From positions 1 to 64,000 of IMG/VR virus record IMGVR_UViG_3300028840_002431: a stretch of 64,000 bases of DNA; one strand, given 5' to 3'. Below, in pieces: positions 12,428 through 35,555 of this stretch (positions within the stretch are counted from its first letter, which is position 1; the number at the start of each line of letters is the position of its first letter). The notes below the pieces were generated by a model, which saw only the letters and a program-made list of their open reading frames with translations, was not told where the DNA came from and made no database searches. Both the position numbers and the translations under genes were made by a program.

Positions 12428-12718
12428 TTATTTCTCGACTAGCTTGAGGGCGTCCACGTTCACCGTGTCGCTCTCGGTCTCTTTATTCAGGTCCTCGACG
12501 CTCTTTTTCTTAAGCTCTTTCACATCCAAATAATCAGCCCCGTCTCCATCCCAACCGAACCGGACTTCACGGCTTGCGCCCCAGCCGCCAAGCATACTCA
12601 TCGTGACCATGACCTTCTCAAGTCGGTCGAGCATATCCGGAGCGCTAGTGACGGTATAGGTCCTGGTTTCCTTGGATTGTTGAGCAGTCAAGAACCTGTT
12701 TAGGACTCGCTGGCGCAT
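12428..12718 (-). CDS. Hypothetical protein with N-terminal QRVLNRF motif
   Basis: 96-aa ORF immediately after the capsid-gene terminator. Confidence 0.65.
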   Translation of the reverse strand: MRQRVLNRFLTAQQSKETRTYTVTSAPDMLDRLEKVMVTMSMLGGWGASREVRFGWDGDGADYLDVKELKKKSVEDLNKETESDTVNVDALKLVEK

Positions 12719-12752
12719 CTTGTCTTAGTCGAGAGATGAAAGGGTTAAATAC

Positions 12753-12780
12753 AAAGGCCGACCCCGGAGGATCGGCCTTT
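12753..12780 (-). terminator. Intrinsic terminator after the major capsid gene
   Basis: AAAGGCCGAT-CCTCCGG-GGTCGGCCTTT hairpin followed by GTATTT on the minus strand. Confidence 0.75.
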
Positions 12781-12803
12781 GAGGGAATGTTCCAGCCTTA
12801 CGA

Positions 12804-13682
12804 CTAGACGCGAGTGACCACGATCCTGGTGAGGCCACGCGGGTTGAAAGCACCGATGCCCAGATTCTCGAAGCACGAGAAGCCGATGGTACGGGCCTTC
12901 GGATCGTCCGCCGACAGAACGGTGATCTCGGTGCGAACCGGGATACGGCCGAACTGCTCAGGCTCGCAGCAAACATACGCGAAGCCGGACGGTACCAGCC
13001 TGGATGTGATGATCTGAGCACCCCACAGAACGGCCTGGAGACCGGTCTTGAGCAAGGTGGCCTGACTCTCGATATCCAGAATGTCACGACCGAACTTACG
13101 GATGTCCGCGTAATCGACGGCGTTCATGTAGATGCGAGCGACACGGAGATCGTGCCTCTCAACCTCTGCGAACGCATCAGCGAGCACTGCGGGCGAAATG
13201 GGCGCAACCACCGGTACGTCTGGGTTGGTCTGGCCCGGAAGTGTGTCGAAGCCCGAGACAGCGATGCTGTCAAGGATTGCAAACACACGCTCGTCCTCTG
13301 CCGCCTGAATCTGAGCCTTGGCCAGATCCTGAGCACGCTCGATGAGATCGAAACGACGCTCCTTGATCTGGGTCAGGGGGATTTCAGGGTTCGAGGCAAT
13401 CTCAAACAAGGGGAAGATCACGCGACGCGGCTTCTGAATGGCGAGAATGTTCTCACCCTCTTCACCCACGACGAACGCCGTGACATCCGGGTCCTTGTCA
13501 TAGATCGGCAACGCACCGTCGGGCAGTTGCTCGACGAGGAAGGTCTTGCGACCAACGGCCGAGTAGTCCCGACGAAGACGGAGCGGTTGAATCATGGAAG
13601 CGGCGAGCTTCGCACGTCCAGCGGCCGTCTTGATGTACTCGCTGATGACTTGTTGCTTGACTTGGTTAGAAACTTGACCCAT
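12804..13682 (-). CDS. Major capsid protein (HK97 fold)
   Basis: 292 aa; position after protease, scaffold and decoration genes; FEIASNPEI, AQIQAAEDERVF and C-terminal NPRG resemble the mycobacteriophage Bxz1-type MCP as recalled. Confidence 0.9.
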   Translation of the reverse strand: MGQVSNQVKQQVISEYIKTAAGRAKLAASMIQPLRLRRDYSAVGRKTFLVEQLPDGALPIYDKDPDVTAFVVGEEGENILAIQKPRRVIFPLFEIASNPEIPLTQIKERRFDLIERAQDLAKAQIQAAEDERVFAILDSIAVSGFDTLPGQTNPDVPVVAPISPAVLADAFAEVERHDLRVARIYMNAVDYADIRKFGRDILDIESQATLLKTGLQAVLWGAQIITSRLVPSGFAYVCCEPEQFGRIPVRTEITVLSADDPKARTIGFSCFENLGIGAFNPRGLTRIVVTRV

Positions 13683-15687: not shown

Positions 15688-17163
15688 TTACGACCGTCCT
15701 AAGGCGTACAGCCGACCTTTTTCCAGCAATTGGGCAGCTTCGCTGCCTGTCACTGCCCGGCCGAGCACCTGACGACAAGCCGTCAGGTAGGTCTCTACAT
15801 CTTCATATGGGCCTGTCCCACCTACATTAAGAACGGCCCTATAAACTCTATTTTCGCCAGCCATTGAGGATTTCTTAGTCAGCAAGTCAAGAACTCTGGA
15901 TACAGCTAACACCTCTCTACCCGTAAACCCAGCTTTCCTAACTAAGGACCAACCTCCGTACCTATGTAGAATTACTCCGTGAAGAACCTTTCTAGCCTCT
16001 GTCTTTCCAACAAAAGAAATCACCATTTTGGCGACCTTACGCCATCCGGGGTTCTTCAAGGCTGACCGGATCAACGTCTCATTTTGTTGGTTAGGATCGA
16101 TAGCCCGGACCTTATCCACTTCTTGCTTGTTAAGTTCTTCTCTAATGTTTTCAACGACTTGGTCGCGGACCGCGTCCGTTAAGTCGGTAATAGCTTTTTG
16201 AAGAGGGGCCTCCTGTTTAGGCTCCTCTTTCGGGGCGACATCGTCGTCAGGCACGAACTGTTGTTGCTGACCCAGCCGGGCGGCCTTGGGCATATGGTTA
16301 GGATCAGCCACCGGAGACGGACGCGAGAAAGCTATGTTCATTCGTGTTTCAAGGCCCTCAAACCCGTCGGCCGAGAGAATGTTCCTGAGGACAGCGCCCT
16401 TGAACGCCGGGTTGGCAACCCACGAGGCTTCGATGAACTTAACAGAATCAGGGTCCGAAAAATGACCACATAGCTCAGCGATTATACGTTCGATGCCCTG
16501 TTCGTCCCTGAACTTATTACCCTTGAAGTATCGTACACAGGAACATAGCTGGGCTTCGTCCAGCGCCACGTTTCCACACTTCGTGCATGTGGTGGACGAA
16601 GTGGAGCATCCCATGGACAGGGTGCCCAACTGACCGCTCTTGATGGCCCGGATCAGAGGAGCGTGTCTAAGATCGTTAGCAATCAGGATGTCGATGTATA
16701 CAGAGTCTCCAACATCCCTGGCCGCAGCATCTATGATTCGACCTTTGGATAGCTCCGGGATCTGGACGTGCTCAACATAGGACTGAGCGCCTACAAACGT
16801 CTTGAAGCTGGCCAGTAAGAGCTTGCGCTCGAAAGCGTCGTTATTGTTGTTAACAAACGGGGCCGTCTTCGGGGTAATGTAATAATCGGTATACTTACGA
16901 TCCACCTCAAAGCCGTCCACAAAGTGGCGGCCGAGAGGAGCCGTTGCCTCATCAACATCCACTGACGCCACGATGGTCGCGTGGCTCAGCATGTACTTGG
17001 CCGGATCATACTCCTGTAGGATGACCTTGGCTGTACGCTTCTGAAAGTCTGGCGAAGGAATTACGGCGTTGCTGCGCAGAGCATCCCACTCCGAAAAACT
17101 TACGTCCGGCTTTTGAACAGTTGCTTTTGCGTACTTGAGAAAAGCCATCTGACCTTTAGCCAA
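15688..17163 (-). CDS. Prohead maturation protease with Cys cluster
   Basis: FVEHVQ...KGRIIDA...YIDILIA...IKSGQLGTLSMGCS then CTKCG...CSC, typical of herpes-like phage prohead serine proteases; sits between portal and scaffold. Confidence 0.75.
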   Translation of the reverse strand: MAKGQMAFLKYAKATVQKPDVSFSEWDALRSNAVIPSPDFQKRTAKVILQEYDPAKYMLSHATIVASVDVDEATAPLGRHFVDGFEVDRKYTDYYITPKTAPFVNNNNDAFERKLLLASFKTFVGAQSYVEHVQIPELSKGRIIDAAARDVGDSVYIDILIANDLRHAPLIRAIKSGQLGTLSMGCSTSSTTCTKCGNVALDEAQLCSCVRYFKGNKFRDEQGIERIIAELCGHFSDPDSVKFIEASWVANPAFKGAVLRNILSADGFEGLETRMNIAFSRPSPVADPNHMPKAARLGQQQQFVPDDDVAPKEEPKQEAPLQKAITDLTDAVRDQVVENIREELNKQEVDKVRAIDPNQQNETLIRSALKNPGWRKVAKMVISFVGKTEARKVLHGVILHRYGGWSLVRKAGFTGREVLAVSRVLDLLTKKSSMAGENRVYRAVLNVGGTGPYEDVETYLTACRQVLGRAVTGSEAAQLLEKGRLYALGRS

Positions 17164-21040: not shown

Positions 21041-22834
21041 CTACCACCGCTCCTCTTCACCGCCGCCCTCGGGTTTCGGCACCTCTTTAAGCTTCAATGC
21101 CTTTTGGACCCTATCGACCACGTCTGTGTTTTCGATGATACGGTCTGCCACGCCATTGTAGATGCCCCGGAGAGCTTCGTTGAACAGGGCGTCGTTGACC
21201 GTAAACATGTCCTTCTCTAACTTGAGCTTGGTGTCGTCCGGATCGATGTTGAACATCTCCAAAATGAGACTGATGTCGATCGACCCCTTCTGGTAGAGAT
21301 TGAACAGGGCGTCATAAGTGTCCTGGGAGTCCCGCAGCGGTAGTCTCGTGAACGAGAGACGAGGGTATAACACCACCTCACCACCCCAGGCGTTCTTCTC
21401 CACAAACCCCTTGCGCCGGGCAATGGGCTTAAAGAGATAGTTCTCCACATATTCCTGAACCATCTCCCGCAAGAACATGTACCGGGTGTTTATGACTTCG
21501 AGCTTGAGCCTGTCTCCGGAGTACAACGTCTCTCCGGATAACAGGCTCTCAGTGACACCCAGACCCGCGTACAGTTGCTTGTCCGTGATGTCATATTCGC
21601 TCGACAAATCCAGAAGCCGGTCCCTGGCTCCGATTTCTTCCCAACGGACTTCATAGTTGGTGACAATCGAATAGTCAGGATCGACGAGGGCCAAATCGAC
21701 TTGCTCCCTCAAATCGTTAACATCCATCTCGGAAATTCTGTCGCCCCAGACGATACGCTTGGGCGTCATCGCCCTGGAAGCAATCTGGGTCTGAGCCTGA
21801 CGTAGCTTTTCCCGGTAGTACAACGTCCGGAGAACGCGGTCTAAGATGCTCTGCCCCAGGTCTTCGCCAGCACCACGTCGCCCGGCTAGGTAATAACAGA
21901 ATGACCCCTCATCCGGGTCTGTGCCCAAGGGAATGAGTTTACCGTTTTCAATATGATCCCGTACCTCTTCAGGCATCTCGCGGACCATCTCTTCCGCGAA
22001 CTCGTCACCGGACTTAGCCTGATTTATAAGAGCGCGGTCCCGCTCGGCCGGTATCAACTCAACACGTAGCTTATCCGTGAACGAATAAGTCGTGACTTTT
22101 ACCTGATCAATGGGCAGGAGGATGAGCCGATCCCATCCCTGATAGTACTCCTGGTAGTAAGATAGCTCCTGATCCTCACGGTCCTCTCGTTCGACCAGAC
22201 CTACCTCAGGCTCTTCTTTAGCCTCACCTGACTCCGTGACAATCGACTTAACACCAATAGCCTTCTCGTCATATCCGATGTCATCCGGAACCTTGACCTC
22301 GGAGTCTTCAGCAAACACGAAGACTCCGCCATCCAACCAGTAGTGGTGAACCATTGTGACGAGCCGCTGGAACAACTTTATACGGTCACACATGGTCGTG
22401 AAGAACCACAGAATGTAGTTGGCGTAGTCGTGAGGGTCTTTGAAGCCTTCCGGGCAAGTAGTTGGCTTCGGGGTAGCCAACCGGACCTTCGACAAGGGTA
22501 GTTCCGTATGCAGATCGATGGACTGCCCCACGATCGGGTCGGTGTTATAAAAGTGCCTGTAGATCTCCCGCTTCTCACGTAGAGACTGCGGCAACTCCAG
22601 AAAATCGGTAGACAACTGCGGGGAGAAGAACTGCCCGGCAGAAGCCATCGTCGTATTCCCGCTGCCGTAGCCGCCAAAGTCGCAATTGGCTATCTTCTGG
22701 AGCTTACGAGCCTCTAGCTCCTTTGGGGTCAAAGAACTGACCGGGCCTTTGGCAATGTACGGGGAAGGCATCGCCCGTGTGACCACGGTCGCGTAAGGAG
22801 CAGAAGTGGCGTTCGTGAACTTTCTAGTGGGCAT
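21041..22834 (-). CDS. Portal protein
   Basis: 597 aa downstream of terminase; YRHFYNTDPIVGQSIDLHTELP, SILDRVLRTLYYREKLRQAQ and LYAGLGVTESLLSG match large-phage portal patterns. Confidence 0.8.
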   Translation of the reverse strand: MPTRKFTNATSAPYATVVTRAMPSPYIAKGPVSSLTPKELEARKLQKIANCDFGGYGSGNTTMASAGQFFSPQLSTDFLELPQSLREKREIYRHFYNTDPIVGQSIDLHTELPLSKVRLATPKPTTCPEGFKDPHDYANYILWFFTTMCDRIKLFQRLVTMVHHYWLDGGVFVFAEDSEVKVPDDIGYDEKAIGVKSIVTESGEAKEEPEVGLVEREDREDQELSYYQEYYQGWDRLILLPIDQVKVTTYSFTDKLRVELIPAERDRALINQAKSGDEFAEEMVREMPEEVRDHIENGKLIPLGTDPDEGSFCYYLAGRRGAGEDLGQSILDRVLRTLYYREKLRQAQTQIASRAMTPKRIVWGDRISEMDVNDLREQVDLALVDPDYSIVTNYEVRWEEIGARDRLLDLSSEYDITDKQLYAGLGVTESLLSGETLYSGDRLKLEVINTRYMFLREMVQEYVENYLFKPIARRKGFVEKNAWGGEVVLYPRLSFTRLPLRDSQDTYDALFNLYQKGSIDISLILEMFNIDPDDTKLKLEKDMFTVNDALFNEALRGIYNGVADRIIENTDVVDRVQKALKLKEVPKPEGGGEEERW

Positions 22835-25123: not shown

Positions 25124-27166
25124 CTATCTCACACCACGAAGACGTAACCCCAAACGGCGCGGGTCTACACGATCCGTGAAACCTCCATGCTTGCGTGCTC
25201 GCATCATTTGATAGCGACCCGGCGTCATGCCCGCGCCCATGTGGCGGGCACCCTCCTTGCCGTACACGAATTTCTCATCGCGCATACGCTCCGAAGTTAA
25301 CCATACCGCTCGCACAAAAGCGTCACTACGGTCGTCGTGGTGGCCCACGGTCTGCGGAGCCTCCACGACCACGATGTTCCTGGACATCTGTTGCGCTTGA
25401 AGTTCCAGTAGCTCCTCAATGAACGCCGAATGCCTACTACCTTGTTTGACTGGGAAATCGTACAAACGGAGACTCTCGTCGAACATCAGCATCTTCGTGT
25501 TCTGGTAGATACGTGACGTGAGGTCCCTCTGGAAGTACTCGCTCTTGAACTGTGTCAGCCCCTTCTTGAGAAGAGCCTGTTCCAACGGAATCCCGTTCCA
25601 ACGGTCAAAAAGACCGTGTGTTATGTGGAACCTCTTTGTTAGAACGTCGATCCAGTGGCCGATTTCGTCGAAGTCTAGACGGCTCGCGTCGCCCAAGAGT
25701 TTGCAGTACGGGGTTGTGAAATTATTACCCAGGTGTGGGTTCGACTCGCGCCAGTCAACACCGGCTTGCCAGTATTCGTGGTAAGCCAGCACAATCTTGT
25801 TGTTTTCGGCGCATGTTATCGCGATGGCCGTGCCGTCTCCCATCAACCCGATATCTATACCCATCTGGTAAGGGTAACGCGGAATCCCGACGACCTGAGG
25901 ACGCAAGTTGGGATCTACACATGAAACAAGATCCTCTTCCCGCTCGATCCAACCACGCACACGATCCGAGAACTGCGCTCCATGCTCTGTCATGAACACG
26001 TTGGCGTCCTCGTGGTACTTCTGCTTGTAGTAAGACTTCGGGATTGTCGGGTTCACCTCCCAGGTAGGGGCCTGGATTGCCAAAATGTTCTCAGACCCGA
26101 CACCCCTGCTCATCGCCAGATGGAATAGATCGTAGAACTTACCCACCTTATTGAGCGGAGACGAAATTGTGATGATTCGAGACTCGACAGGGTACATTTC
26201 CCCGTCGGACATCTTCATCGGCATCCCGTCGTCTCCCTTGGGAGAGAAGGCAGCCGTGCTGGGCGTTACAGCGTCGTATATGTCCTTGGCCGACGACTGG
26301 CCCGTGTCCTGGTAGTGGGCCATCTCGTCCATAATCACGACGATATTACCCGACCCACGAAGGCCCTTGGCTATACAACTCTTGAAGGTGACACGTAGAG
26401 TTGCCTTACCATTGAAACTGACGAACTTGCCGTCTTGGTGACGAAGCGTGGGTCCGTAGCGATCCAGGTCGTAGGGGGTCCTGAACTGAATGTGTGACAG
26501 GGTGTTGTTGGCGATATACGGCTTGAAGTAGTCACACTTCGCTAAGTGTGTAGTCACCTCGTTGAAAAGAATACCCGCCTGATCCTTATCGGTGGCCACC
26601 GACGTGATCTGGATGCGGTTCCCGTTAGGTAGCCCGTAATACTCCTGGGGGTTGAATAAATTTAGTAAACGGTAGACTTCGTAGCTGGCGAATATACCAC
26701 TGAGTGTTGTCTTCCCGGCACGACGGCCGATGGCCAAAACTAACTCGCGCCGTTCGTGATCTTGCTCCCCGATGTTACAACGACCCTCGTTGTACAGATA
26801 ATGGAGATACTCTTTCTCGGTGAACTCGTAGAGGAGATCCTCACCGAACATGTCGGTGACTCTTATGGTCTTTTCTTCGTCGTCTAACGGAAGATGGTAG
26901 TAGAGCTTGACGATAAAGCGCTGGGCCGGGAACAACTTCATCCCGATTCCCCAGGCTTGCTCGATGTACTCTATGATATTAAAAATACGGGGCTGAAACG
27001 GACGTACCTCGTCCTCGTCAAAACCGTCCGGGTCGAGTTCCCCGTCCGCTATCTTGTTCTGTAGCTGGATATCAAGCTGTTTTTGCTCTACAGCTTGCTT
27101 GGCGCGAACTCCAGCATCTCTAATGAGTGCTGAAACCCCTGCTCCGGATCGCTTTCTCTGTGCCAC
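25124..27166 (-). CDS. terL: Terminase large subunit
   Basis: Walker A IGRRAGKT, Walker B IVVIMDE, RNase H-like MGIDIG...D and HHDDRSDA. Confidence 0.92.
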   Translation of the reverse strand: MAQRKRSGAGVSALIRDAGVRAKQAVEQKQLDIQLQNKIADGELDPDGFDEDEVRPFQPRIFNIIEYIEQAWGIGMKLFPAQRFIVKLYYHLPLDDEEKTIRVTDMFGEDLLYEFTEKEYLHYLYNEGRCNIGEQDHERRELVLAIGRRAGKTTLSGIFASYEVYRLLNLFNPQEYYGLPNGNRIQITSVATDKDQAGILFNEVTTHLAKCDYFKPYIANNTLSHIQFRTPYDLDRYGPTLRHQDGKFVSFNGKATLRVTFKSCIAKGLRGSGNIVVIMDEMAHYQDTGQSSAKDIYDAVTPSTAAFSPKGDDGMPMKMSDGEMYPVESRIITISSPLNKVGKFYDLFHLAMSRGVGSENILAIQAPTWEVNPTIPKSYYKQKYHEDANVFMTEHGAQFSDRVRGWIEREEDLVSCVDPNLRPQVVGIPRYPYQMGIDIGLMGDGTAIAITCAENNKIVLAYHEYWQAGVDWRESNPHLGNNFTTPYCKLLGDASRLDFDEIGHWIDVLTKRFHITHGLFDRWNGIPLEQALLKKGLTQFKSEYFQRDLTSRIYQNTKMLMFDESLRLYDFPVKQGSRHSAFIEELLELQAQQMSRNIVVVEAPQTVGHHDDRSDAFVRAVWLTSERMRDEKFVYGKEGARHMGAGMTPGRYQMMRARKHGGFTDRVDPRRLGLRLRGVR

Positions 27167-27781: not shown

Positions 27782-28178
27782 TACCTTCTACCGGAGGAGT
27801 CCCACCCCCGCCTTCCGTTTCGATCAGGTATTGGCTCAGGTTGCTTACAGTGTCGTACCCCTTGTCTTTGGGGACCTGTTTGTCCAACACCTTCTCCATG
27901 TCCGTGTAGTCGTCAGCGTCTCCCGGCCACCCCTTGGTAACGTAATTGTATACGCTGACCTGAGAGGGTAACGGTTTGAAAACGTCTTTCGGACGGACAT
28001 CGTCTTTGTCTGGTTTCACCGTATCTTCACGCTCGTCCGTCGAGCCGTAATCCTCAACGACCTCGCGAGAAAGATCCTTTGGCTTGTTTACAGGCTGGGT
28101 AGAATCCCGCGCCTCTTCGCGGGCACTTTCCGCGATTTGAAAACGAGCCGCGACACGTAATGTTAAAGGAGATGTCAA
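27774..28178 (-). CDS. Hypothetical acidic protein with N-terminal LRVAARFQIA motif
   Basis: 134 aa; ATGA overlap with the upstream gene. Confidence 0.7.
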   Translation of the reverse strand: MTSPLTLRVAARFQIAESAREEARDSTQPVNKPKDLSREVVEDYGSTDEREDTVKPDKDDVRPKDVFKPLPSQVSVYNYVTKGWPGDADDYTDMEKVLDKQVPKDKGYDTVSNLSQYLIETEGGGGTPPVEGND

Positions 28179-30133
28179 AGCTTGACCTTCCCGGTTCCGA
28201 GTTGCACATCCACGATGTTAGGGTCCGGAGCCTCGTTAACAGAAACATCCATACCCTGTTGCATCTGGAACTCAGCCAAAGCAGAAGCCCCGTTGTTGAC
28301 CAATGAACCATATGAAACGTCCGTCGAGCGGCCGGACGCCAAGACTTCGCGCTGTTGGGCGGCCTTGTCCACATACGGAGGCTCGTCCACCAGACGCTTG
28401 TTGAGCTTTGAGCAGACTCCGGTGTTGACCTGATGGATACAACTTTCGCACTTCGAGCCTTGCTTCACATACCCGACCATACGAGTCCGGTGGAGACGGA
28501 CAGCTTCTTCACAACCCTTGCCGTAGTCGTCGTAAACCGACGGGTCCACGTAGAAGACGCCCTGTAGTCCTTGTTCGGCTACAACCTTCTTGAGTTCGTC
28601 CTTCGCGGCGACGAGATCCCGAACCTCAAACCGCGTCTTGAGAGCATCCAAAAGGTCGTTGCCGTACAAACCCTCGTTCATGTATTTTGACGCTTGTTTT
28701 GCCACGTCCTTCCGGGTCAAACCACTGGTCACATGGCCAACCTCCTGACCATGAAAACCTTCCATGAAACCCATACGGGTCGGGGCCACTTGAGAGTACG
28801 AAGCCTTCTTGGTCGCTTCGTGGATGGTCCTAAGCGCTTGTGCGGGGGTGTCGCCCCACTTTCGAGGAACGGCTTCCCATGGCGGCAACCGGCCAGCGGT
28901 TCGGTGTTCCTGGAGAACGGCATCTACTGTGTCCTGAGTAACGACCTCAGACGCATCCTTAATTAAAGGCTTGCCGTAAAGGAGGCATCGAGTCTTGTTG
29001 TAGATACACGAGGCACACTTGTCCCCGGCCACAATCGCCCTGACACCAGGGTTGTGTTTGGCCAGGAAATCAGCACCCGTGTGACAGTCGGCAAAACTGG
29101 CTTGCTTCGAGTAGACCACACCGTAGAGGCCAGACTCCTTGAACGTAGGTCCCCAGTAAGTGTGGGTGCGAGTCAGGAGGTCGGTATCAAAAGCCAACTT
29201 GAGCGAGCGCACCAACTCCTCGTGAGACAACCCCTTCACCATCTCCCGGTGAAGGAAAGCCACAACAGGACGGCCCTCTGCCGCCTGTTTGTCCCCCACG
29301 GGCTGGGACAACTGCTTTCGCACCTCTTGTTCGGGAACGGTGGCCTTGACCGTCCGGTCGAGACCCTGGCCCTCGTAATCATCCGTGCTCGACGTTTTCG
29401 GGGCAAGGAACGCTTGTCTGATCCGCTCTTTCGGGTCCGACGCCGAAGCTTTTACAGAACATCCGCAACCCTCTTGGTTACGCTCGATCGCTTCGGCCAA
29501 TTCATCAGAATACGGGATCTCGAACTGGATCTCTTTGTGGAAGACACCACAGTGCTTCCCGGTAGCTGTCTGACAGGCGTGAGAACAACCTTCGCACGCT
29601 TCTTTGCCCAAAATATACAGGGCCTTGTCCGCGTACCGTCGGACAAACTCCACCTGTTTGCCGCCTTGGGCACAGGCCGGGAAATCAGCGGCCGAAACGT
29701 AAAGGTCGCCCAAAAGCCCTCTCTCTTGCATGACTTCGGCAAGAACTTCACGATGATTGTGTAAATCGTCCATCGCGAAACGCTTTGTGAGTTCATCCCG
29801 AATCCGCCGAGAGTCGCTCGACTGCATCAAGGTAAACCGGGCGATCCTACGGATGGTATCGGCCTCTTCCCTGAGACGCCCGTGAGCCTGAGACATATCC
29901 CCCATGGTCCTCGGATCGTCGATGCCAGGGTTGGGAAGCGAAGAATTTGGGGTCAGATACGCGGAAGGGGACTCTCCTTCCCTGGCCCACAGAGCTTCAA
30001 GATCGGGCTGGATGTCCAAATTTTGTTTGGGCAACGTATCCATCTCACGATACGAGGTCTCGTCCACGTCGAGCCAATCCAAATTGGACACAGACGAGTC
30101 TTTCAAGAAATTATCGAGATCAAACGCTGACAT
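28175..30133 (-). CDS. Protein with three internal Cys-rich repeats
   Basis: Three E.GL.G..Y...C...CxxC...C...K.[IL] units. Confidence 0.75.
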   Translation of the reverse strand: MSAFDLDNFLKDSSVSNLDWLDVDETSYREMDTLPKQNLDIQPDLEALWAREGESPSAYLTPNSSLPNPGIDDPRTMGDMSQAHGRLREEADTIRRIARFTLMQSSDSRRIRDELTKRFAMDDLHNHREVLAEVMQERGLLGDLYVSAADFPACAQGGKQVEFVRRYADKALYILGKEACEGCSHACQTATGKHCGVFHKEIQFEIPYSDELAEAIERNQEGCGCSVKASASDPKERIRQAFLAPKTSSTDDYEGQGLDRTVKATVPEQEVRKQLSQPVGDKQAAEGRPVVAFLHREMVKGLSHEELVRSLKLAFDTDLLTRTHTYWGPTFKESGLYGVVYSKQASFADCHTGADFLAKHNPGVRAIVAGDKCASCIYNKTRCLLYGKPLIKDASEVVTQDTVDAVLQEHRTAGRLPPWEAVPRKWGDTPAQALRTIHEATKKASYSQVAPTRMGFMEGFHGQEVGHVTSGLTRKDVAKQASKYMNEGLYGNDLLDALKTRFEVRDLVAAKDELKKVVAEQGLQGVFYVDPSVYDDYGKGCEEAVRLHRTRMVGYVKQGSKCESCIHQVNTGVCSKLNKRLVDEPPYVDKAAQQREVLASGRSTDVSYGSLVNNGASALAEFQMQQGMDVSVNEAPDPNIVDVQLGTGKVKL

Positions 30134-30135
30134 AG

Positions 30136-31710
30136 TTATCCTTCTCTCTCGTAAGGACCTTCTTCAACCTCTCTCTGATATACATAGTCACATTCCATGT
30201 TGCGGGTGTCTGAGTCCCACTTGATGTACGGCTGGTTCCCCTGGTCGTAGCTGTACGCAGTCCCAGGTATCATGTCTCTCGGGGTTTCAACGGGAGCGCT
30301 CTCGACCTCAGGCACCTCACTGGTGGCGTTTACCTCATTGTCGGCCTTGTCTCCCTCGTAATAGTCCGAACGGGCGACAGAAGGCATGACATCAAGAGGG
30401 AGCATAGAACAAGCGGTCTTCCACTTCGCGTTACGACCGCCTACAGCCAGTTCAACGGTCGGTGTCGTGTCATCACGCTCTGTCGATCCGCCATCCAGGT
30501 CGCCGGGTAGTTCCGAAGACGGCCCATAAACACCACCATCAGAGTCAACAGTCCCATAACCTCCCGCGCCCTGGCCATGAGCATCGTTGCCATCGCCGTA
30601 CCCGATTCCGAAGTCGTAGCCTTTTGTGGGAGTGGGGTCGGTGTCCTTGTCCGGGAGATTTGAGGCCGCGCTTCGCATTGGTTCGATCTGAACACCTTCC
30701 GCAGCCTCAAGTTCCGCCTCTACCGATCCCGGCGTTACCAGGGTCTTAGACTTGGTCGAAGTCTTCAGGGTGCGGACAGTAGTACCCCGCACGCTGGCCG
30801 CTAACTCCCGATCCCGCTCCGCTGTCTTGTCCAACAGGTTGTTGTCCCACTCGCTTTGATAGAGGTACTCGTTCGGGACGCCGTCAGTCCGGCTCCATTC
30901 GTCGTGTGTGGACATCGGCTCTTCTGTGTTATGAGAGCCAAAAGGGCCAGTCTGATCCACATCGGCCCGGTCCAGGTGTTGGACACGAGGTCCAGGCAAC
31001 GTCTGGGTTGGAAGGGAACTACCCCGTCGATCGTAACCATACTCAGAAGCCTGTTTGACGTGCTGCCCGGACTCGACGACCTCCGCAGCGTCCGGCAGGT
31101 TAGCGTTATCAGGTAGCTGGGATTTCGGCTCCCCCTCCCCTTCTTCCATCTCCGCCCGCTCACCGCTCTGCTCTGCCTCCTCCATACCTTCTTCGACTTC
31201 TTCTTCCGGGTTCTCCATGATTTGCTCGGCCTCGCCCACGAGCCTTTCCACGCTTTCGATGTCGTTTCTTTCCAACTCTGCGAGCTTCGGCTTCCAGTGA
31301 GGGGCGTTGATCTCATCGTGAATGGTGTCGGAAATCGAAGACAACCCTTCAGCGGCGTTATAGAGCGCCTTACGTACCTCCTTGATGGACATCACATAAC
31401 CCTGGCCGCCGATGAGGCCGTCAGGGGATACTGTAGAAGACTTGATCTTGGACAACTGCCGATGAGCCGTCAGTGTGTGGCCCAGAGCAACGCTCATCGC
31501 CCAGAGTGTCTGGGCCAACGGCTTGAGAGCCTTGGGATCATAAGGAAAGTTCTTTGGGATCGCACGCTTCATGAAGCTGCCACCGCCGAAGTCATCCTTA
31601 GACTTGAACTGGTCTGGATCGAACTCCGCGACCTTTATTCGAGGTTCGAGGTGAGCCTCTCGCAAATGGCGGTCCAGAACGGCCTTTGTCTTTTCATACG
31701 CTTGCGGCAT
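30136..31710 (-). CDS. Hypothetical acidic protein, putative head-associated
   Basis: Start reassigned to ATG 31710, just after the upstream stop; repeated K/R-x-A-S-x-L-P units. Confidence 0.7.
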   Translation of the reverse strand: MPQAYEKTKAVLDRHLREAHLEPRIKVAEFDPDQFKSKDDFGGGSFMKRAIPKNFPYDPKALKPLAQTLWAMSVALGHTLTAHRQLSKIKSSTVSPDGLIGGQGYVMSIKEVRKALYNAAEGLSSISDTIHDEINAPHWKPKLAELERNDIESVERLVGEAEQIMENPEEEVEEGMEEAEQSGERAEMEEGEGEPKSQLPDNANLPDAAEVVESGQHVKQASEYGYDRRGSSLPTQTLPGPRVQHLDRADVDQTGPFGSHNTEEPMSTHDEWSRTDGVPNEYLYQSEWDNNLLDKTAERDRELAASVRGTTVRTLKTSTKSKTLVTPGSVEAELEAAEGVQIEPMRSAASNLPDKDTDPTPTKGYDFGIGYGDGNDAHGQGAGGYGTVDSDGGVYGPSSELPGDLDGGSTERDDTTPTVELAVGGRNAKWKTACSMLPLDVMPSVARSDYYEGDKADNEVNATSEVPEVESAPVETPRDMIPGTAYSYDQGNQPYIKWDSDTRNMECDYVYQREVEEGPYEREG

Positions 31711-31711
31711 T

Positions 31712-31996
31712 TTATCCCTTGAGAGGTTCACCGTTATCGTCAAACAAGCGCTCGATGAAGAAGCTGCCGTCGCCCTCCTTCTTGAGCGCCCAGAGGTCGC
31801 GGTCGCTCTTATGGATCAGAGTGTCCGACGACAACCGAACGAAGTTGTGCAAATCCTTGATCGAGGCGACCTTAGCCCGCCCTGTCATGGTTTGCGGACG
31901 TAAGATGTGTTCTTCGCGCTTGAACAGAGCATCCAAGCCCGTGGCACCCGATACTTCCATTTGACCAAGATCAAAATCTGCCATCCCTAACCTCAT
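31712..31996 (-). CDS. Hypothetical protein
   Basis: 94 aa; ATGA overlap (alternative start 31984, MADFDLG). Confidence 0.65.
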   Translation of the reverse strand: MRLGMADFDLGQMEVSGATGLDALFKREEHILRPQTMTGRAKVASIKDLHNFVRLSSDTLIHKSDRDLWALKKEGDGSFFIERLFDDNGEPLKG

Positions 31997-32910
31997 GTGA
32001 TATTGAGCGTCACCGGCACGTCTACGCTCATGTTAGAACTATATCCTGTGAATCTGAGAGTCTCATTGTAAGAACCGGAGGCCAGACTAGCGGACGGCGC
32101 TACCGTTACCGTAATCGGTTGAGAAGCACCTCCATTAAGAGACCCGTAAACAGGTGAATAACTGGTCAGCCATGTGGACCCCACCAACTGACGGATCTGA
32201 TAGTCGAGAACCGACGTTGGCGGACCGGAGTTCGTGAGATTAATTTGTTGTGACGGAATCGGCGGGTATGGTCCCGTCAGGGGCTTTGCCACATTGAACG
32301 TCAAACTCGTCGGCAACACCGTGATTTCGGAAAGCGGGCGCACGACAATGTTAACAGCCACCGTTTGCGGGCTGTTTGTGGCCGACGAACTCTGTACCGT
32401 CAATGTAGCCGAGTAAGGGCTGTTTATGGCCAGAAGGCTGGCGCTATCCACCGAAACATCGAAACGACCCGACTCGTTGGAAGCCAGACCACCTATGTTT
32501 GCCGGTAAGGCGGCCACATACGCGGCCGACGATGTAATCGTGACCGCCAGAAGCGAACCTAAGATTCCGTTGTTAGTGACCGTTACCGACTTGGCTTCCG
32601 AGACACCCCGACCTTCGTCTACGACGAAATCCAGAGTTAGAGGCGCGAGTAAGATGCTGGGCCGGTAAGCTAACAACATCTCCACAATGGAGTCGGCCAT
32701 CGCCTGGACGACCTCTCCTGGGATCGGTATGGAATCTCGCAAAAGGCCGTACGGCGAGACTATGTCCCTGACTTCCGTCGATACCGTTGACTGGGACACG
32801 TCGATGCGAGTCACCCACTTCCACGCACCGCACGGCAGCGAAACCTGAAATTGGTAATCTTGGTATTGGAGTGTAGACAAGGGAATAGTCCTCGTCTGAT
32901 CCCACTCCAT
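31993..32910 (-). CDS. Ig-like (BACON-type) tandem-domain protein
   Basis: Two repeats of P.TL.F......S..[IV].[LV]TN.G...L.Y.[IV]....W[LV]...P..G.L......V.V....L....Y...L........[VI].V.L.[VI]. Confidence 0.7.
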   Translation of the reverse strand: MEWDQTRTIPLSTLQYQDYQFQVSLPCGAWKWVTRIDVSQSTVSTEVRDIVSPYGLLRDSIPIPGEVVQAMADSIVEMLLAYRPSILLAPLTLDFVVDEGRGVSEAKSVTVTNNGILGSLLAVTITSSAAYVAALPANIGGLASNESGRFDVSVDSASLLAINSPYSATLTVQSSSATNSPQTVAVNIVVRPLSEITVLPTSLTFNVAKPLTGPYPPIPSQQINLTNSGPPTSVLDYQIRQLVGSTWLTSYSPVYGSLNGGASQPITVTVAPSASLASGSYNETLRFTGYSSNMSVDVPVTLNIT

Positions 32911-32922
32911 AAAAGAAAACCC

Positions 32923-32940: not shown

Positions 32941-33087
32941 TCAGTCCGCTCGAACCAATGTGTAGGCGGTCCGGGACTCGTCAAGTTCCCGCTTATAGGT
33001 CTCTTCTAACTCCTTCTCGGCCGCTTCCATCGCCGCGAGTGCGTCACTCTCAGCCTCTATTATAGGGAGCGGCTCCTTCTCACACAC
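32941..33087 (-). CDS. Small acidic protein (48 aa), not in the ORF track
   Basis: GTG TGT GAG AAG...GAC TGA gives MCEKEPLPIIEAESDALAAMEAAEKELEETYKRELDESRTAYTLVRAD; start overlaps the upstream stop. Confidence 0.5.
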   Translation of the reverse strand: MCEKEPLPIIEAESDALAAMEAAEKELEETYKRELDESRTAYTLVRAD

Positions 33088-33721
33088 AGCGGTCCACGCC
33101 CCTATCACTCCACTGCGGTAGGCTCACGGCCCTGAGAATATTGAAATTCTTGGATGCGATTGAGGAGAATATCTTATGGTATGGTTGGAACTGGTCATCA
33201 CCCTCGGCCGCATCCTTAAGAACCTCAACGGCCTTGAAAAACCGATGGCGGACACGTCCTTGTGTTAACTTCAACTTGGACGCCACTTCTGATTGGCACG
33301 TTGTCTGCCACATCCCCACCAAAATATTGATGTCGATTTGCTCAAAGATCTCGGCAAGATCCTTCCGCATGTCCTCTTCCGTGACCGTAGGAATGGACAG
33401 CAAGAACTTGATGCGTTGAATCCCCCGGTCCAGCCGGTAACTGATAGCCGCCTGGGTTACATCGAAGATTTCGGCTATGTCGGCTTGGCGTTTCTTACAG
33501 ACGTAATAGAGATATATAAGATCTGCCTCGCGTTCTGGTATCCGGTCAAGAAGGGGCGCGACAATCGTTTCATAGTCATCAGTGGAGAACAACGCCTCCA
33601 TCTCAGCCTCTTCTTCTTCCCTCTCTAGTCTCTCTCTTTCGTCTATAGGTGTTGGATCAGGTGCTGCAAAACGGTTAGCTAACTCAGCGGGATCGACCGG
33701 AATAACATAGCCACTTGACAT
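33080..33721 (-). CDS. Sigma-70 region 4-like protein with two HTH units
   Basis: LDRIPEREADLIYLYY...QADIAEIFDVTQAAISYRL is a canonical r4 HTH; second unit QSEVASKLKLTQGRVRHRF; AAGGAG SD. Confidence 0.75.
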   Translation of the reverse strand: MSSGYVIPVDPAELANRFAAPDPTPIDERERLEREEEEAEMEALFSTDDYETIVAPLLDRIPEREADLIYLYYVCKKRQADIAEIFDVTQAAISYRLDRGIQRIKFLLSIPTVTEEDMRKDLAEIFEQIDINILVGMWQTTCQSEVASKLKLTQGRVRHRFFKAVEVLKDAAEGDDQFQPYHKIFSSIASKNFNILRAVSLPQWSDRGVDRCV

Positions 33722-33770: not shown

Positions 33771-35555
33771 CTAAGGTTGTTTTGGGAAGAACGCAGCTAG
33801 AATAGACTTAGGCTTTACCTCAATACCCTCTAGCTCGGCTTCTGCCCTACTCTGATCTGGATTCGATTCGATCTGTCTGAATGGTACGTCTTTCAGAGCT
33901 AACAAGTCAATGTTTTTAATAACCCGATCCTCGTTAGCACGCAATTTGGAAACCTGACTTTTTCCTAACCCGGCCAAATTAGATCCTAACAGGGCCTCGA
34001 CTGAACCATACAGTTTGATGAGTTTGGAGGCTGTCTTAGGACCAAAGCCGGGGACTCCGGGTATATTATCTGAGGTGTCTCCGCTCAACGCCCGTAGGTG
34101 GATCATACTCTCCGGAGCCACTCCATACTCCCTCTTGACGAGCGCCGGGTTGTATAACCTTTCCTTACCCATCCCCACCTTTGGGCACAACTGGTGAGTG
34201 AACTCCGATACCAACTGTAACAGATCCCTGTCCGTGGAAATCAGCACGTTTGGGCGGCCTTCGAGCGGCCCTCTCACCAGGGCGGCCATAACATCGTCAG
34301 CCTCTTCGTCTGGATTAAACGCCTGAATGACGCCGAATGACGGCAAATTATCTCGAAGCCAATCCATCTCGAAGGTGTTGGCCGCTGCCCCGGACCGCGA
34401 AATCCGGTTGGCCTTGTAGTCAGGGAACATAGCCTTCCGCCGTTGCGACGAACCATCCCAACACACGAAAACCCGCGCCTTCGGGAATCTCTTTTTGTAG
34501 GAGCCAAGGCTTCTTAGAAACCCAACGATGGCACCGGTCGGTCGGCCCTGAGAGTCCGTGAGGTCGCTCAAGCCGGGAGCGGAAAGACATCGAATGTATA
34601 ATTGGGTGCCGTCCACGACCAAATTCATAGGAGTAGGTTCTGTCATTTCTCTTACGTCCGAGTATATCGTAAAGATCTTGGCGCAAGCTTCTGATAGAAA
34701 CCGCACCTCCTGGTGTTTCTGAGACATGAAGCTTAGGTCCGGGAGAGGAGCGCTAACAGTATGAATCTGACTCCGTAAAGAAACCCCTGTCTGTAGGTTT
34801 CGTAGCTCCTGGAACTTGGCCCACAAGGGGTCAAAATCTATCCGGGAATGGTACGCTCTTATAAAATGGTACGTGGCCCGGCTCTTTTCGATCCAACCAT
34901 CCATACGACCGAGATTCCGATGGCCTTCCCGGACCCCTTCCAACTCGGAACCGGACCAGCGGGCTAACATAAGAGCACCCCGCGCCCACTCCGTTAGCTT
35001 TTCCAACTTCGTCCGGTGGACCACGTGAGGAGGTTTTGATTTCAACCTCAAGAACGCTCTGGGTAATGTTACCAACCGATCTGTGGATCTTAATTGAATG
35101 TGGACCGTCACCGAATCGTGCTCATGAATCTCCTCCCGCACGACAGCTTCGATGTTTTTGTAAGGGCCTGAGGTTATAACTACGATGTCGTCAACCTCTA
35201 TGCCCTGATCCACCTCAACCTTTATCTGCTTACGCAGTTGGTCTATCTGCTCCGGGGAGACAGTCGCCAGACGCTTGTCCTTCTTAACTCCGGTCGGAAC
35301 GTATAAAGGTCCCTGGACGTATTTCGTGTCTACCAGCCGGGCGTAGTGGGTCTCCGTGTGCCTGTGTTGAACGAAGGCGTACCCGTCCACAAGGTAATGG
35401 AAAACCCTCTGCTCCCCACGTTGAACCACTGACGCCGGTACGAAAACTTCGGCGTCCCGGATATGATGACGGATCGAATTCCGTACCATATCCGGATCTT
35501 CATTTTCTGCTTTAGAGGTAAGCTCTAATACTACCCACTGGTTTTCCGTACCCAT
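33771..35555 (-). CDS. NusG-like (NGN+KOW) domain fused to a Pol I-type 5'-3' exonuclease / flap endonuclease
   Basis: N-term WVVLEL...EVFVPA...DGYAFV and IEVDDIVVITSGPYKNIEAVV (KOW); C-term VVDG, VCWDG, YKANR, EEADDV, STDRDLLQL, GDTSDNIPGVPGFGPKTA. Confidence 0.85.
   Translation of the reverse strand: MGTENQWVVLELTSKAENEDPDMVRNSIRHHIRDAEVFVPASVVQRGEQRVFHYLVDGYAFVQHRHTETHYARLVDTKYVQGPLYVPTGVKKDKRLATVSPEQIDQLRKQIKVEVDQGIEVDDIVVITSGPYKNIEAVVREEIHEHDSVTVHIQLRSTDRLVTLPRAFLRLKSKPPHVVHRTKLEKLTEWARGALMLARWSGSELEGVREGHRNLGRMDGWIEKSRATYHFIRAYHSRIDFDPLWAKFQELRNLQTGVSLRSQIHTVSAPLPDLSFMSQKHQEVRFLSEACAKIFTIYSDVREMTEPTPMNLVVDGTQLYIRCLSAPGLSDLTDSQGRPTGAIVGFLRSLGSYKKRFPKARVFVCWDGSSQRRKAMFPDYKANRISRSGAAANTFEMDWLRDNLPSFGVIQAFNPDEEADDVMAALVRGPLEGRPNVLISTDRDLLQLVSEFTHQLCPKVGMGKERLYNPALVKREYGVAPESMIHLRALSGDTSDNIPGVPGFGPKTASKLIKLYGSVEALLGSNLAGLGKSQVSKLRANEDRVIKNIDLLALKDVPFRQIESNPDQSRAEAELEGIEVKPKSILAAFFPKQP

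What the first reader, a model, noticed from the sequence alone, without database searches (positions are those of the whole stretch)
33080..33721. Sigma-region-4-only protein with duplicated HTH at the replication/morphogenesis boundary
Seen: two r4-like HTHs, but the ~55 aa before the first are acidic and show no recognisable sigma region 2. It is the last sizeable gene before the structural operon and lies directly downstream of the NusG fusion. Known: region 2 is needed for -10 recognition and core binding. Inference: half of a split sigma factor, or an activator or appropriator of host RNAP switching on late genes.
Basis: partly seen in the sequence, partly recalled or inferred. Interest (0 to 1): 0.6.

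Follow-up and report, generated by a model that had tools for sequence, protein, structure and literature searches.

The report
Tandem sigma-region-4 late-transcription factor
A huge phage carries a conserved 213-residue protein made of two copies of the sigma-factor "region 4" DNA/RNA-polymerase-binding module and no region 2; it always sits between a NusG-like gene and the head-and-packaging operon, so it is most likely part of the late-gene switch rather than a sigma factor.

Summary
ORF 33080-33721(-) encodes a 213-aa protein (P0001).

**Architecture**
- Residues 47-113 are a bona fide sigma region-4 fold: Pfam Sigma70_r4 E 5e-14, and Z 9.1 at rmsd 1.1 Å to SigF region 4.
- Residues 113-175 are a second, diverged copy; profile-profile comparison of the two halves gives E 1.4e-11.
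- There is no region 2.
- The protein also carries a conserved N-terminal peptide, an acidic linker and a conserved C-terminal tail.

**Family and context**
- The window is the first 64 kb of a 416-kb phage record with no detectable RNA polymerase gene.
- The unnamed family has at least 593 clusters at 50% identity.
- In 80 related phage loci the gene order is fixed: clamp loader, NusG-like(+FEN), this gene, a conserved 13-nt element (GGTTTTCTTTTAT), then the operon with terminase, portal, protease and major head protein.
- Distant relatives keep a NusG-like gene directly upstream. One natural protein (P0193) fuses NusG-like and sigma4-sigma4 in a single chain.

**Reading**
- Best reading: a late-transcription factor acting on host RNA polymerase together with the NusG-like protein, as a Q/gp39/RinA-like switch.
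- The mechanism is inferred, not shown.
- "Half of a split sigma" stays possible but unsupported. The only sigma-2-bearing genes lie 67-69 kb away.
- This is a new variant of a known kind.

The parts
33080..33721 (-). Gene for the 213-aa tandem sigma-region-4 protein (P0001); the stop codon is included.
   Evidence: ORF and translation. Pfam Sigma70_r4 E 5e-14 with two stretches. Family of 733 word-search hits and 593 representative clusters.
33659..33721 (-). Residues 1-21: a conserved N-terminal peptide (MSxGYVIPVDPAELANRFAAP) with low model confidence. It is probably a partner-docking motif.
   Evidence: Alignment A1 shows D10, P11 and R17 nearly invariant. pLDDT is 45-53.
33584..33658 (-). 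Residues 22-46: an acidic linker that varies in sequence and length.
   Evidence: Alignment A1 shows indels and no conservation here.
33386..33583 (-). Residues 47-112: HTH1, a canonical sigma region-4 fold (regions 4.1-4.2).
   Evidence: Structure search: Z 9.1, rmsd 1.1 Å over 57 residues to SigF region 4 (8jzt), followed by many ECF sigma-4 domains. Pfam match at residues 57-105.
33197..33385 (-). Residues 113-175: HTH2, a diverged second region-4-like helix-turn-helix. The stretch TTCQSE...LTQGRVRHRFFKAV is conserved and largely invariant in A1.
   Evidence: hhalign of HTH1 against HTH2 gives E 1.4e-11. The genome scan gives 20 bits for r4. Fold matches: DesR/LuxR HTH Z 6.5 and RpoS region 4 Z 5.9. 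Invariant columns are listed.
33083..33196 (-). Residues 176-213: a conserved C-terminal module (PYHxIFSxISSKxFNILRxVxLPQWxxRG). It is one helix followed by a low-confidence tail, and a variable insertion site lies just before it.
   Evidence: Alignment A1. pLDDT falls below 50 after residue 190.
33771..35555 (-). Upstream gene of 594 aa. The N-terminal part (35016-35555) is NusG-like (NGN plus KOW). A linker follows, then a 5'-3' exonuclease/FEN domain (33771-34655).
   Evidence: Pfam 5_3_exonuc_N E 1e-24. phrog_6386 'transcription antiterminator' E 8.6e-6. NusG NGN E 2e-3 and KOW E 3e-3, both below their cut-offs. Present upstream in all 80 related loci.
32909..32921 (-). Conserved non-coding element GGTTTTCTTTTAT heading the downstream operon. 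It is a candidate late promoter (-10-like with no -35) or an ops-like loading or pause site.
   Evidence: It is the best PWM hit in the whole 416-kb genome, at 22.9 bits. The same element lies upstream of the Ig-like gene's annotated start in 42 non-identical related loci: 35-47 nt in most, 10-25 nt where an earlier start codon was picked. There are almost no other hits within ±8 kb. It stays with the downstream gene when an insert separates the two genes.
31993..32910 (-). First gene of the late block, an Ig-like protein of 305 aa as listed. The true start is probably the TTG about 30 nt downstream of the listed ATG, preceded by a GAGGA Shine-Dalgarno.
   Evidence: Weak Pfam Ig-like hit. Conserved downstream neighbour in 75 of 80 loci. 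Start and SD pattern across loci.
32941..33108 (-). A 55-aa ORF overlapping the 3' end of the gene; probably not a real gene.
   Evidence: tblastn finds it only in the three loci that are identical to the window. It has no family hit.

Best explanation
P0001 is a stand-alone protein built from an internal duplication of the sigma-70 region-4 module (sigma4-sigma4). It carries short conserved N- and C-terminal peptides and has no region 2, so it cannot act as a sigma factor by itself. It is a core gene of a clade of roughly 0.2-0.55 Mb phages that appear to use the host RNA polymerase.

The gene is the last one of the replication (middle) gene block. It is paired with a NusG-like gene just upstream. 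A conserved 13-nt element follows, which opens the head-and-packaging operon.

**Most likely function (inferred).** It is the late-transcription switch factor and works on RNA polymerase together with the NusG-like protein.
- HTH1 keeps the sigma-4 fold that in real sigma factors holds the beta-flap tip and reads duplex DNA.
- HTH2, with its largely invariant recognition helix, reads a conserved DNA target or partner.
- The two proteins together would turn on the roughly 20-kb late operon, make its transcription processive, or both.
- Comparable systems are lambda Q, phage P23-45 gp39 and RinA.

**Shown:** the architecture, the family, the synteny, the cis-element and the fusion.
**Inferred:** RNA polymerase binding, DNA binding, the target and the timing.
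For: **Architecture**
- Region-4 fold for HTH1, Z 9.1.
- HTH2 is homologous to HTH1, E 1.4e-11.
- Both HTH regions contain many invariant columns across a 27-90% identity range.

**Dependence on host polymerase**
- No Rpb2_6 or Rpb1_2 hit in 416 kb. A T7-type polymerase search also found nothing, but its control rang nowhere, so it is uninformative.

**Context**
- All 80 related loci keep the order clamp loader, NusG-like(+FEN), sigma4-sigma4, Ig-like gene ... TerL on one strand.
- The downstream block holds TerL, portal, protease and major head protein.

**Link to NusG**
- L084 has the NusG-like gene directly upstream with no FEN hit between.
- Relatives at 34-35% identity in other genomic contexts (L098, L099) also have a stand-alone NusG-like gene directly upstream, E 4e-9 and 7e-10.
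- P0193 is a single 374-aa ORF forming its own transcription unit. Residues 4-149 match the window's NusG-like domain (E 3e-18) and residues 172-347 match P0001 (E 2e-40).

**Cis-element**
- GGTTTTCTTTTAT is conserved at one fixed place, just upstream of the first late gene, while the surrounding intergenic sequence is not conserved.

**Precedents in the literature**
- RinA is region-4-like and sits just upstream of the morphogenesis genes (PMC3152322).
- P23-45 gp39 binds RNA polymerase, blocks initiation and antiterminates (PMC3351154).
- Lambda Q (PMC7171158).
Against: - There is no experimental or expression evidence. No RNA runs hold this sequence.
- The complex prediction with the E. coli beta flap gave no verdict.
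- Neither phage promoter-like motif found here has a conserved -35-type element, which is what a region-4 HTH would normally read.
- The nature of the 13-nt element is unsettled. It could be a promoter, a pause or loading site, or in some loci the U-tract of a terminator.
- Some distant family members (L094, L097) have no NusG-like neighbour.
- The NusG-like assignment rests on sub-threshold Pfam scores plus one PHROG hit.
Confidence: 0.55

Rival explanations
1. Split sigma factor. The protein supplies the region-4 (beta-flap and -35) half and pairs with a separately encoded region-2 protein. The candidate partner in the same genome is P0122 (G000 100998-101957, minus strand). This would resemble T4 gp55+gp33 or B. 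subtilis SigO-RsoA.
For: - P0122 has a sigma region-2 fold with a roughly 120-aa insertion: Z 7.6 to SigB and Z 6.7 to T4 gp55 in 7d7d.
- None of 29 P0122 family members gives a region-4 Pfam hit, while 12 of 29 give weak r2 hits.
- P0122 homologues occur in 4 of 5 complete related genomes.
- The phage promoter-like motifs lack a -35 element, as T4 late promoters do (PMC2988020).
Against: - P0122 lies 67 kb away, not adjacent, unlike the known two-subunit sigma pairs.
- It has its own C-terminal four-helix domain whose helix lengths resemble region 4.
- Two whole-length alignments to complete sigma factors span both of its domains (9m7y_F and 4xln_F).
- It is undetectable in one complete relative that does have the sigma4-sigma4 gene (G005).
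- Profile-profile comparison and synteny give no link between the two families.
- A split-sigma role would not explain why region 4 is duplicated.
Confidence: 0.15
2. An ordinary two-HTH DNA-binding regulator, either repressor or activator, that acts without replacing or mimicking sigma on RNA polymerase. For example, it might shut off the early GGTGTA-type promoters or regulate only its own neighbourhood.
For: - The region-4 fold is shared with LuxR/GerE, KorA, DeoR/SorC and other plain DNA-binding domains.
- Weak KorA, Cro and MarR-type hits occur across family members.
- The genome holds a less conserved paralogue, P0121 (139841-140356, plus strand), behind an early-type promoter motif.
Against: - The persistent pairing with a NusG-like gene, and the natural fusion to one, point to action on the polymerase itself.
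- HTH1 matches true sigma-4 domains clearly better than LuxR-type domains: Z 8-9 against 6-7.
- Conserved disordered termini suggest protein partners.
Confidence: 0.2
3. A DNA-binding protein with a role outside transcription: a small-terminase-like packaging initiator, an origin-binding protein or a partition protein at the end of the replication module.
For: - It lies between the replication and packaging genes.
- Some small terminases and KorA/ParB-type proteins use similar HTH domains (a general-knowledge lead only). The KorA hit is weak, E 0.056.
Against: - Five conserved genes separate it from TerL, and two unassigned ORFs directly upstream of TerL are better small-terminase candidates.
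- No oligomerisation domain is predicted.
- The pairing and fusion with NusG-like has no rationale for packaging or replication.
Confidence: 0.06
4. A sigma-4 decoy. The protein would mimic host sigma region 4 to titrate a host or phage factor that binds region 4 (anti-sigma, Rsd- or AsiA-like, or activators). This would redirect the polymerase indirectly.
For: - HTH1 resembles the region-4 domains seen in anti-sigma complexes (8jzt, 6dxo, 5wuq, 3vep).
- PhyR shows that sigma-like domains can serve as decoys (3t0y hit).
Against: - No anti-sigma-like neighbour is conserved.
- The conserved HTH helices fit DNA reading better than mimicry.
- A decoy role does not explain the NusG link.
Confidence: 0.04

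Closest known systems
RinA / ArpU / Ltr family late activators of Gram-positive temperate phages
   Same: - A small phage protein with similarity to sigma region 4.
- Encoded immediately upstream of the first morphogenesis and packaging genes.
- RinA binds and activates the late promoter (PMC3152322).
   Different: - No sequence membership: no RinA or ArpU model appears in the Pfam or NCBIfam results.
- P0001 has two region-4 modules plus conserved terminal peptides.
- It is paired with a NusG-like gene.
- It belongs to huge lytic-type phages.
Lambda Q-type late antiterminators
   Same: - Encoded just upstream of the late operon.
- Uses an HTH related to sigma region 4.
- Acts at a promoter-proximal element and then modifies RNA polymerase for a long late operon, helped by a Nus factor (PMC7171158).
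- Weak hits to PF06530 (E 0.041) and to the Q-like phrog_79 (E 1e-4).
   Different: - The scores are far below the family cut-off: 14.3 against 26 bits.
- It has a tandem HTH.
- The partner here is a phage-encoded NusG-like protein, not host NusA.
- No terminator-based control has been demonstrated.
T4 gp33 with gp55 and the gp45 clamp (split late sigma)
   Same: - A phage without its own RNA polymerase.
- Late promoters without a -35 element.
- A small helical protein takes sigma-4's place on the beta flap.
- The genes lie beside the clamp-loader and replication genes (PMC2988020, PMC7824862).
   Different: - gp33 does not bind DNA and is not recognisably region 4 by sequence, whereas P0001 is a clear region-4 homologue, twice over.
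- No gp33 family hit was found.
- Any clamp-binding motif is untested.
Thermus phage P23-45 gp39 and Xanthomonas phage Xp10 p7
   Same: Both are small phage proteins that bind host RNA polymerase at or near the beta flap. They shut down -35-dependent initiation and make elongation resistant to termination on phage late genes (PMC3351154, PMC6624301).
   Different: - They are unrelated in sequence and fold.
- Neither is paired with a NusG-like protein.
- The resemblance is functional only and is hypothetical for P0001.
ECF (group 4) sigma factors
   Same: - HTH1 scores over the TIGR02937 superfamily cut-off: 46.6 against 42.9 bits.
- It superposes on ECF region-4 domains at Z 8-9.
   Different: - The match covers only the last 75 positions of the 165-position model.
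- Region 2 is absent.
- A second region-4 copy stands where nothing is found in ECF sigma factors.

Membership tests
Sigma-70 family sigma factor (including ECF) | Region 2, which provides core binding through the beta' clamp helices plus -10 recognition and DNA melting. | tested here: not met
   No Sigma70_r2 hit at E up to 10. Only 46 residues precede HTH1, and they are modelled as two low-confidence helices. The best r2 match in the genome lies elsewhere.
Sigma-70 family sigma factor (including ECF) | Region 4, the helix-turn-helix that binds the beta-flap tip and the -35 element. | tested here: met
   Pfam Sigma70_r4 E 5e-14, 51.9 bits against a cut-off of 24.1. Fold match Z 9.1, rmsd 1.1 Å. 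The fold is met; flap and DNA binding themselves were not tested.
Two-subunit sigma (SigO-RsoA type) / T4 gp55+gp33 type | A separately encoded region-2 partner, co-located or co-regulated with the region-4 half. | tested here: inconclusive
   Neither neighbour is sigma-like. A region-2-fold protein, P0122, exists 67 kb away, but it has its own C-terminal domain and a patchier distribution.
Lambda Q antiterminator family (PF06530) | Sequence membership above the Pfam gathering score. | tested here: not met
   14.3 bits against a cut-off of 26, E 0.041. phrog_79 gives E 1e-4 over the HTH only.
Lambda Q antiterminator family (PF06530) | Read-through of a terminator placed between the regulator gene and the late genes. 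| tested here: inconclusive
   A hairpin of -8 kcal/mol or stronger abuts the T-rich element in 22 of 49 loci, against 27% of random control positions. There is none in the window itself.
RinA/ArpU late activators | Sequence membership in the NCBIfam or Pfam RinA/ArpU models. | tested here: not met
   No such model appears among the Pfam hits (E up to 10) or among the 25 NCBIfam hits shown, of 35 found.
RinA/ArpU late activators | The gene lies immediately upstream of the morphogenesis and packaging operon and its promoter. | tested here: met
   Conserved position in 80 loci, with a conserved element between the gene and the late block.
LuxR/GerE-type HTH regulators | A GerE-type four-helix HTH as the DNA-binding domain, usually joined to a receiver or ligand domain. 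| tested here: not met
   P0001 has no GerE hit. LuxR-type folds score lower than sigma-4 domains, Z 6-7 against 8-9. One distant member, P0266, has a sub-threshold GerE hit on HTH2: 23.1 bits against a cut-off of 23.5.
Small terminase subunit | The gene is adjacent to TerL and encodes an oligomerisation domain. | tested here: not met
   Five conserved genes lie between it and TerL. The model is two HTH domains with no coiled-coil or beta-barrel core.

The most novel reading that the evidence does not exclude
The NusG-like protein and the sigma4-sigma4 protein together form a bipartite sigma surrogate.
- The NGN domain would take the place of sigma region 2 on the beta' clamp helices and read the non-template strand of the conserved T-rich element, as RfaH reads ops.
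- The tandem region-4 protein would hold the beta flap and the duplex DNA.
- Late-gene initiation, or immediate post-initiation capture, and processive antitermination would then be carried out by one two-part factor.
- The natural fusion P0193 would be the single-chain version.
- The FEN domain fused to the NusG-like module in this clade might additionally tie the system to replication intermediates, a parallel to clamp-activated T4 late transcription.
Probability: 0.1. Interest if true: 0.9.

Novelty: new variant of a known kind. Interest (0 to 1): 0.6.

Why it matters
Huge phages without their own RNA polymerase must reprogramme the host enzyme, and for the uncultivated 0.2-0.55 Mb clades the late switch is unknown.

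This work defines:
- a large family, named only by automatic annotation, of at least 593 clusters at 50% identity, with an architecture I found described nowhere: region 4 duplicated and no region 2;
- its fixed partner, a phage NusG paralogue that in one lineage is fused to it;
- a conserved candidate control element at the head of the structural operon.

That gives a concrete three-part system (protein, protein, DNA site) that can be rebuilt in vitro. If the two proteins act together on RNA polymerase, it would be a new way of combining an initiation-type module (sigma 4) with an elongation-type module (NusG).

If it turns out to be a plain activator, it is still the likely master late regulator of a widespread phage clade, and it corrects the automatic 'sigma-24' and 'XRE' labels.

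Tried and rejected
1. **Complex prediction.** P0001 residues 45-190 against the E. coli RpoB flap (831-1057) scored 0.02 against a mark of 0.34, so there is no verdict. It is not evidence either way.
2. **Expression.** Only three DNA metagenome runs (sediment and seawater) hold the stretch, and no RNA run does.
3. **Terminator reading of the element.** I tested whether the T-rich element is the U-tract of an intrinsic terminator. Hairpins abutting it are only mildly enriched (45% against 27% in controls; mean -6.9 against -5.0 kcal/mol) and absent in the window. This is inconclusive, so it was not adopted.
4. **Long 'fusion' proteins.** P0143 (FEN plus sigma4-sigma4) and P0148 and P0159 (sigma4-sigma4 plus the Ig-like protein) contain translated intergenic sequence at the junction. 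I treat them as read-through or gene-calling artefacts. They show adjacency only, and only P0193 is counted as a real fusion.
5. **Whole-model Foldseek search.** It found nothing at E up to 1e-3, because the two domains are flexibly linked. The exhaustive aligner was needed.
6. **P0122 and P0123 against solved structures.** Sequence and profile searches of the PDB found nothing.
7. **P0122 family against P0001 family.** hhalign gave no significant relation. The only alignment is between the two N-terminal peptides, at E 0.13.
8. **Sigma-70 consensus promoter and terminator scans** around the gene gave no more than shuffled sequence does.
9. **Own RNA polymerase.** Rpb2_6, Rpb1_2 and T7-type searches found none. 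The T7-type control rang nowhere, so that search is uninformative.
10. **Mistaken call.** One search was sent with a fragment that was too short and did not run.
Full report
**What the window is.** The window is the first 64 kb of a 416,539-bp IMG/VR virus record, classed as linear and about 87% complete. Nearly all window genes lie on the minus strand.
- 35.6-38.2 kb holds replication genes: primase, a metallopeptidase-like gene and a clamp loader.
- Below 32.9 kb lie TerL (25124-27166), portal (21041-22834), head maturation protease (15688-17163) and major head protein (12804-13682).
- No multisubunit RNA polymerase domains were found anywhere in the record. A T7-type search was uninformative because its control rang nowhere.
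- The phage therefore presumably relies on the host enzyme.

**Observation.** ORF 33080-33721(-) encodes 213 aa (P0001).
- Pfam gives Sigma70_r4 at E 5e-14 with two stretches and Sigma70_r4_2 at E 1e-8. There is no region-2 hit even at E 10.
- NCBIfam sigma models match only with their C-terminal ends, both for residues 30-105 and for 112-178.
- An AF2 model built on a 20-sequence alignment (mean pLDDT 75) is all-helical. The helices at 49-109 and 115-174 form two HTH bundles, helix 176-189 belongs to the C-terminal module, and both termini have low confidence.
- An exhaustive structure comparison places residues 47-113 on sigma region 4: Z 9.1 with rmsd 1.1 Å over 57 residues to SigF, followed by a long list of ECF, FliA, SigB and sigma-70 region-4 domains.
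- Residues 112-190 match LuxR-type HTHs at Z 6.5 and RpoS region 4 at Z 5.9.
- BLAST of the two halves against each other shows nothing. Profiles built from 123 family members align at probability 97.4%, E 1.4e-11. The protein is therefore an internal duplication of the region-4 module.
It missed the two conserved terminal modules: residues 1-21 and about 176-208.

**Family.**
- The word-index search found 733 relatives. The best 120 are 60-89% identical and 206-254 aa long, many on contigs of 280-550 kb.
- The exhaustive search found 593 representative clusters at E up to 1e-3 and 289 at E up to 1e-10. Most of the best 150 are 190-290 aa, and none of the long members scanned carries a region-2 domain.
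- Source names are automatic labels only, such as 'sigma24 family' or 'XRE-type'.
- Both HTH regions are strongly conserved, with many invariant columns across the alignment. This implies a target shared by all these phages.
- The same genome holds a second, poorly conserved paralogue: P0121, 171 aa, at 139841-140356(+), 33% identical over both HTHs.

**Context.** In 80 related viral loci (36-100% identity) the gene order is fixed on one strand: primase, metallopeptidase, clamp loader, NusG-like(+FEN), sigma4-sigma4, an optional insert of up to about 2.7 kb, Ig-like gene, four further conserved genes, a probable small-terminase region, then TerL.

The upstream 594-aa protein has three parts:
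- an N-terminal NGN plus KOW: NusG E 2e-3 over the full model length, KOW E 3e-3, and phrog_6386 'transcription antiterminator' E 8.6e-6. The Pfam scores are below their cut-offs;
- a linker;
- a clear 5'-3' exonuclease.

**The link to NusG goes beyond this clade.**
- In L084 the NusG-like gene lies directly before the sigma4-sigma4 gene, with no FEN hit between.
- In two distant relatives (34-35% identity, in different gene neighbourhoods) a stand-alone NusG-like gene sits directly upstream. Its E-values to the window's domain are 4e-9 and 7e-10.
- P0193 is a 374-aa single ORF flanked by divergent genes on an NCBI MAG contig. Residues 4-149 are 31% identical to the window's NusG-like domain (E 3e-18). 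Residues 172-347 are 38% identical to P0001 (E 2e-40).
- Two other distant members lack a NusG-like neighbour. One lies beside DNA polymerase genes and one beside a second sigma4-sigma4 paralogue.

**A conserved cis-element.** Phylogenetic footprinting of the region upstream of the Ig-like gene revealed GGTTTTCTTTTAT, with variants TTTCTTCTTAT and TTTACTTGTA.
- In most loci it lies 35-47 nt before a GTG or TTG start and is followed by a GAGGA Shine-Dalgarno. In some loci an earlier start codon was picked, which puts it 10-25 nt upstream. The surrounding intergenic sequence is not conserved.
- A 12-nt PWM at 13 bits or more hits exactly this place in 42 non-identical loci and almost nowhere else in ±8 kb of the GC-rich loci. 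The element stays with the Ig-like gene when an insert separates it from the sigma4-sigma4 gene.
- In the window it lies at 32909-32921(-) and is the best match in the whole 416-kb genome, at 22.9 bits.
- Weaker look-alikes precede several late genes at about 8.88, 10.05, 11.16 and 15.67 kb.
- No -35-like conservation accompanies it.
- Two readings are possible: a -10-only late promoter, comparable in logic to T4 late promoters (PMC2988020), or an ops-like pause or loading site for the NusG paralogue.
- The idea that it is the U-tract of a terminator is only weakly supported.

**Search for a region-2 partner.** Region 2 scores below the cut-off everywhere in the genome. The best match lies in a 319-aa ORF, P0122, at 100998-101957(-).
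- Its AF2 model (pLDDT 84) has a sigma region-2 fold interrupted by a roughly 120-aa insertion. It matches SigB at Z 7.6, T4 gp55 at Z 6.7, and many other sigma-2 domains.
- It also has a C-terminal four-helix domain that does not rank with region-4 domains.
- No family member gives a region-4 Pfam hit.
- Language-model look-alikes of P0122 and of its neighbour P0123 are sigma-70/ECF clusters. This is a lead only.
- P0122 homologues are present in 4 of 5 complete relatives.
- A split-sigma arrangement therefore cannot be excluded. It has no positive support from adjacency, co-distribution or profile similarity.

**Interpretation.**
- Shown: the architecture, the size and conservation of the family, the fixed position at the replication/morphogenesis boundary, the partnership with a NusG paralogue including one fusion, and a conserved element at the head of the late operon.
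- Inferred: the protein binds RNA polymerase (by analogy with region 4 on the beta-flap tip) and/or DNA at the late control region, and together with the NusG-like protein it switches on late transcription or makes it processive.
- The functional parallels are RinA (PMC3152322), lambda Q (PMC7171158) and P23-45 gp39 (PMC3351154).
- A review of jumbo phages describes 'minimal' single-HTH sigma factors and gp33 orthologues, and my term search of its text found no mention of NusG (PMC7824862).
- I found no description of a tandem region-4 protein or a NusG pairing in the papers searched. That library is incomplete.

**Verdict.** I rate it a new variant of a known kind, with interest 0.6.

Noticed in passing
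Whole genome G000. In the window, for example 62708(-), 62738(+) and 10743(-); mostly between 40 and 300 kb of the record.: A promoter-like motif (consensus ttCCGGTGTAATAT) sits at a fixed distance from start codons. Of 265 GGTGTA sites, 41 have the ATG of an ORF of at least 50 aa exactly 15-16 nt downstream. No -35 element is conserved. This looks like a -35-less promoter class giving leaderless mRNAs. It is absent from the 0-40 kb late block, and it recurs in relatives L061 and L079.
   Followed up: partly
window 33771-35555 (-): A NusG-like (NGN plus KOW) domain is fused to a 5'-3' flap exonuclease in one 594-aa protein. The fusion is conserved in 79 of 80 related loci. It could physically link transcription to replication intermediates. 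The roughly 120-aa middle segment matches no family.
   Followed up: partly
G000 100152-101957 (-), outside the window: Two adjacent divergent sigma-like genes. P0122 has a region-2 fold with a roughly 120-aa insertion and a C-terminal domain that is not region-4-like. P0123 is sigma/ECF-like only by language-model features and by eye.
   Followed up: partly
G000 139841-140356 (+), outside the window: A second tandem region-4 paralogue, P0121 (171 aa). It lacks the N-terminal peptide and acidic linker, is poorly conserved (4 database hits), and sits behind a CGGTGTA motif. In relative L097 two paralogues lie in tandem, which hints at hetero-oligomers.
   Followed up: partly
window 33659-33721 (-) and G000 101900-101957 (-): The conserved N-terminal peptides of P0001 (SSGYVIPVDPAELANRF) and P0122 (SHVSVIPKNYDELERQY) resemble each other. 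hhalign gives E 0.13, which is not significant. They may be a shared docking motif, or the likeness may be chance.
   Followed up: no
window about 12700-12800 (-): A GC-rich hairpin followed by TTTGTATTT lies directly after the major head protein gene. It is the first clear terminator-like structure I saw downstream of the 32.9-kb element, which suggests a late transcription unit of about 20 kb. The consensus scan missed it.
   Followed up: no
window 31993-32910 (-): The listed ATG start overlaps the conserved 13-nt element. Comparison with relatives suggests the real start is the TTG about 30 nt downstream, behind a GAGGA Shine-Dalgarno. That would make the protein about 10 residues shorter.
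   Followed up: partly
Between the sigma4-sigma4 and Ig-like genes in L012, L015, L030, L038, L045, L065, L079 and others: This junction is a hotspot for inserted genes, with 1.3-2.7 kb of extra DNA in about a fifth of the loci. In L061 and L079 the insert starts with a GGTGTA-type promoter motif.
   Followed up: no
window 28175-30133 (-) and 30136-31743 (-): Two large conserved late-block proteins have no family match. One of 652 aa carries repeated Cys-rich motifs. The other, of 535 aa, is very acidic and looks disordered. Both are syntenic in nearly all 80 loci.
   Followed up: no
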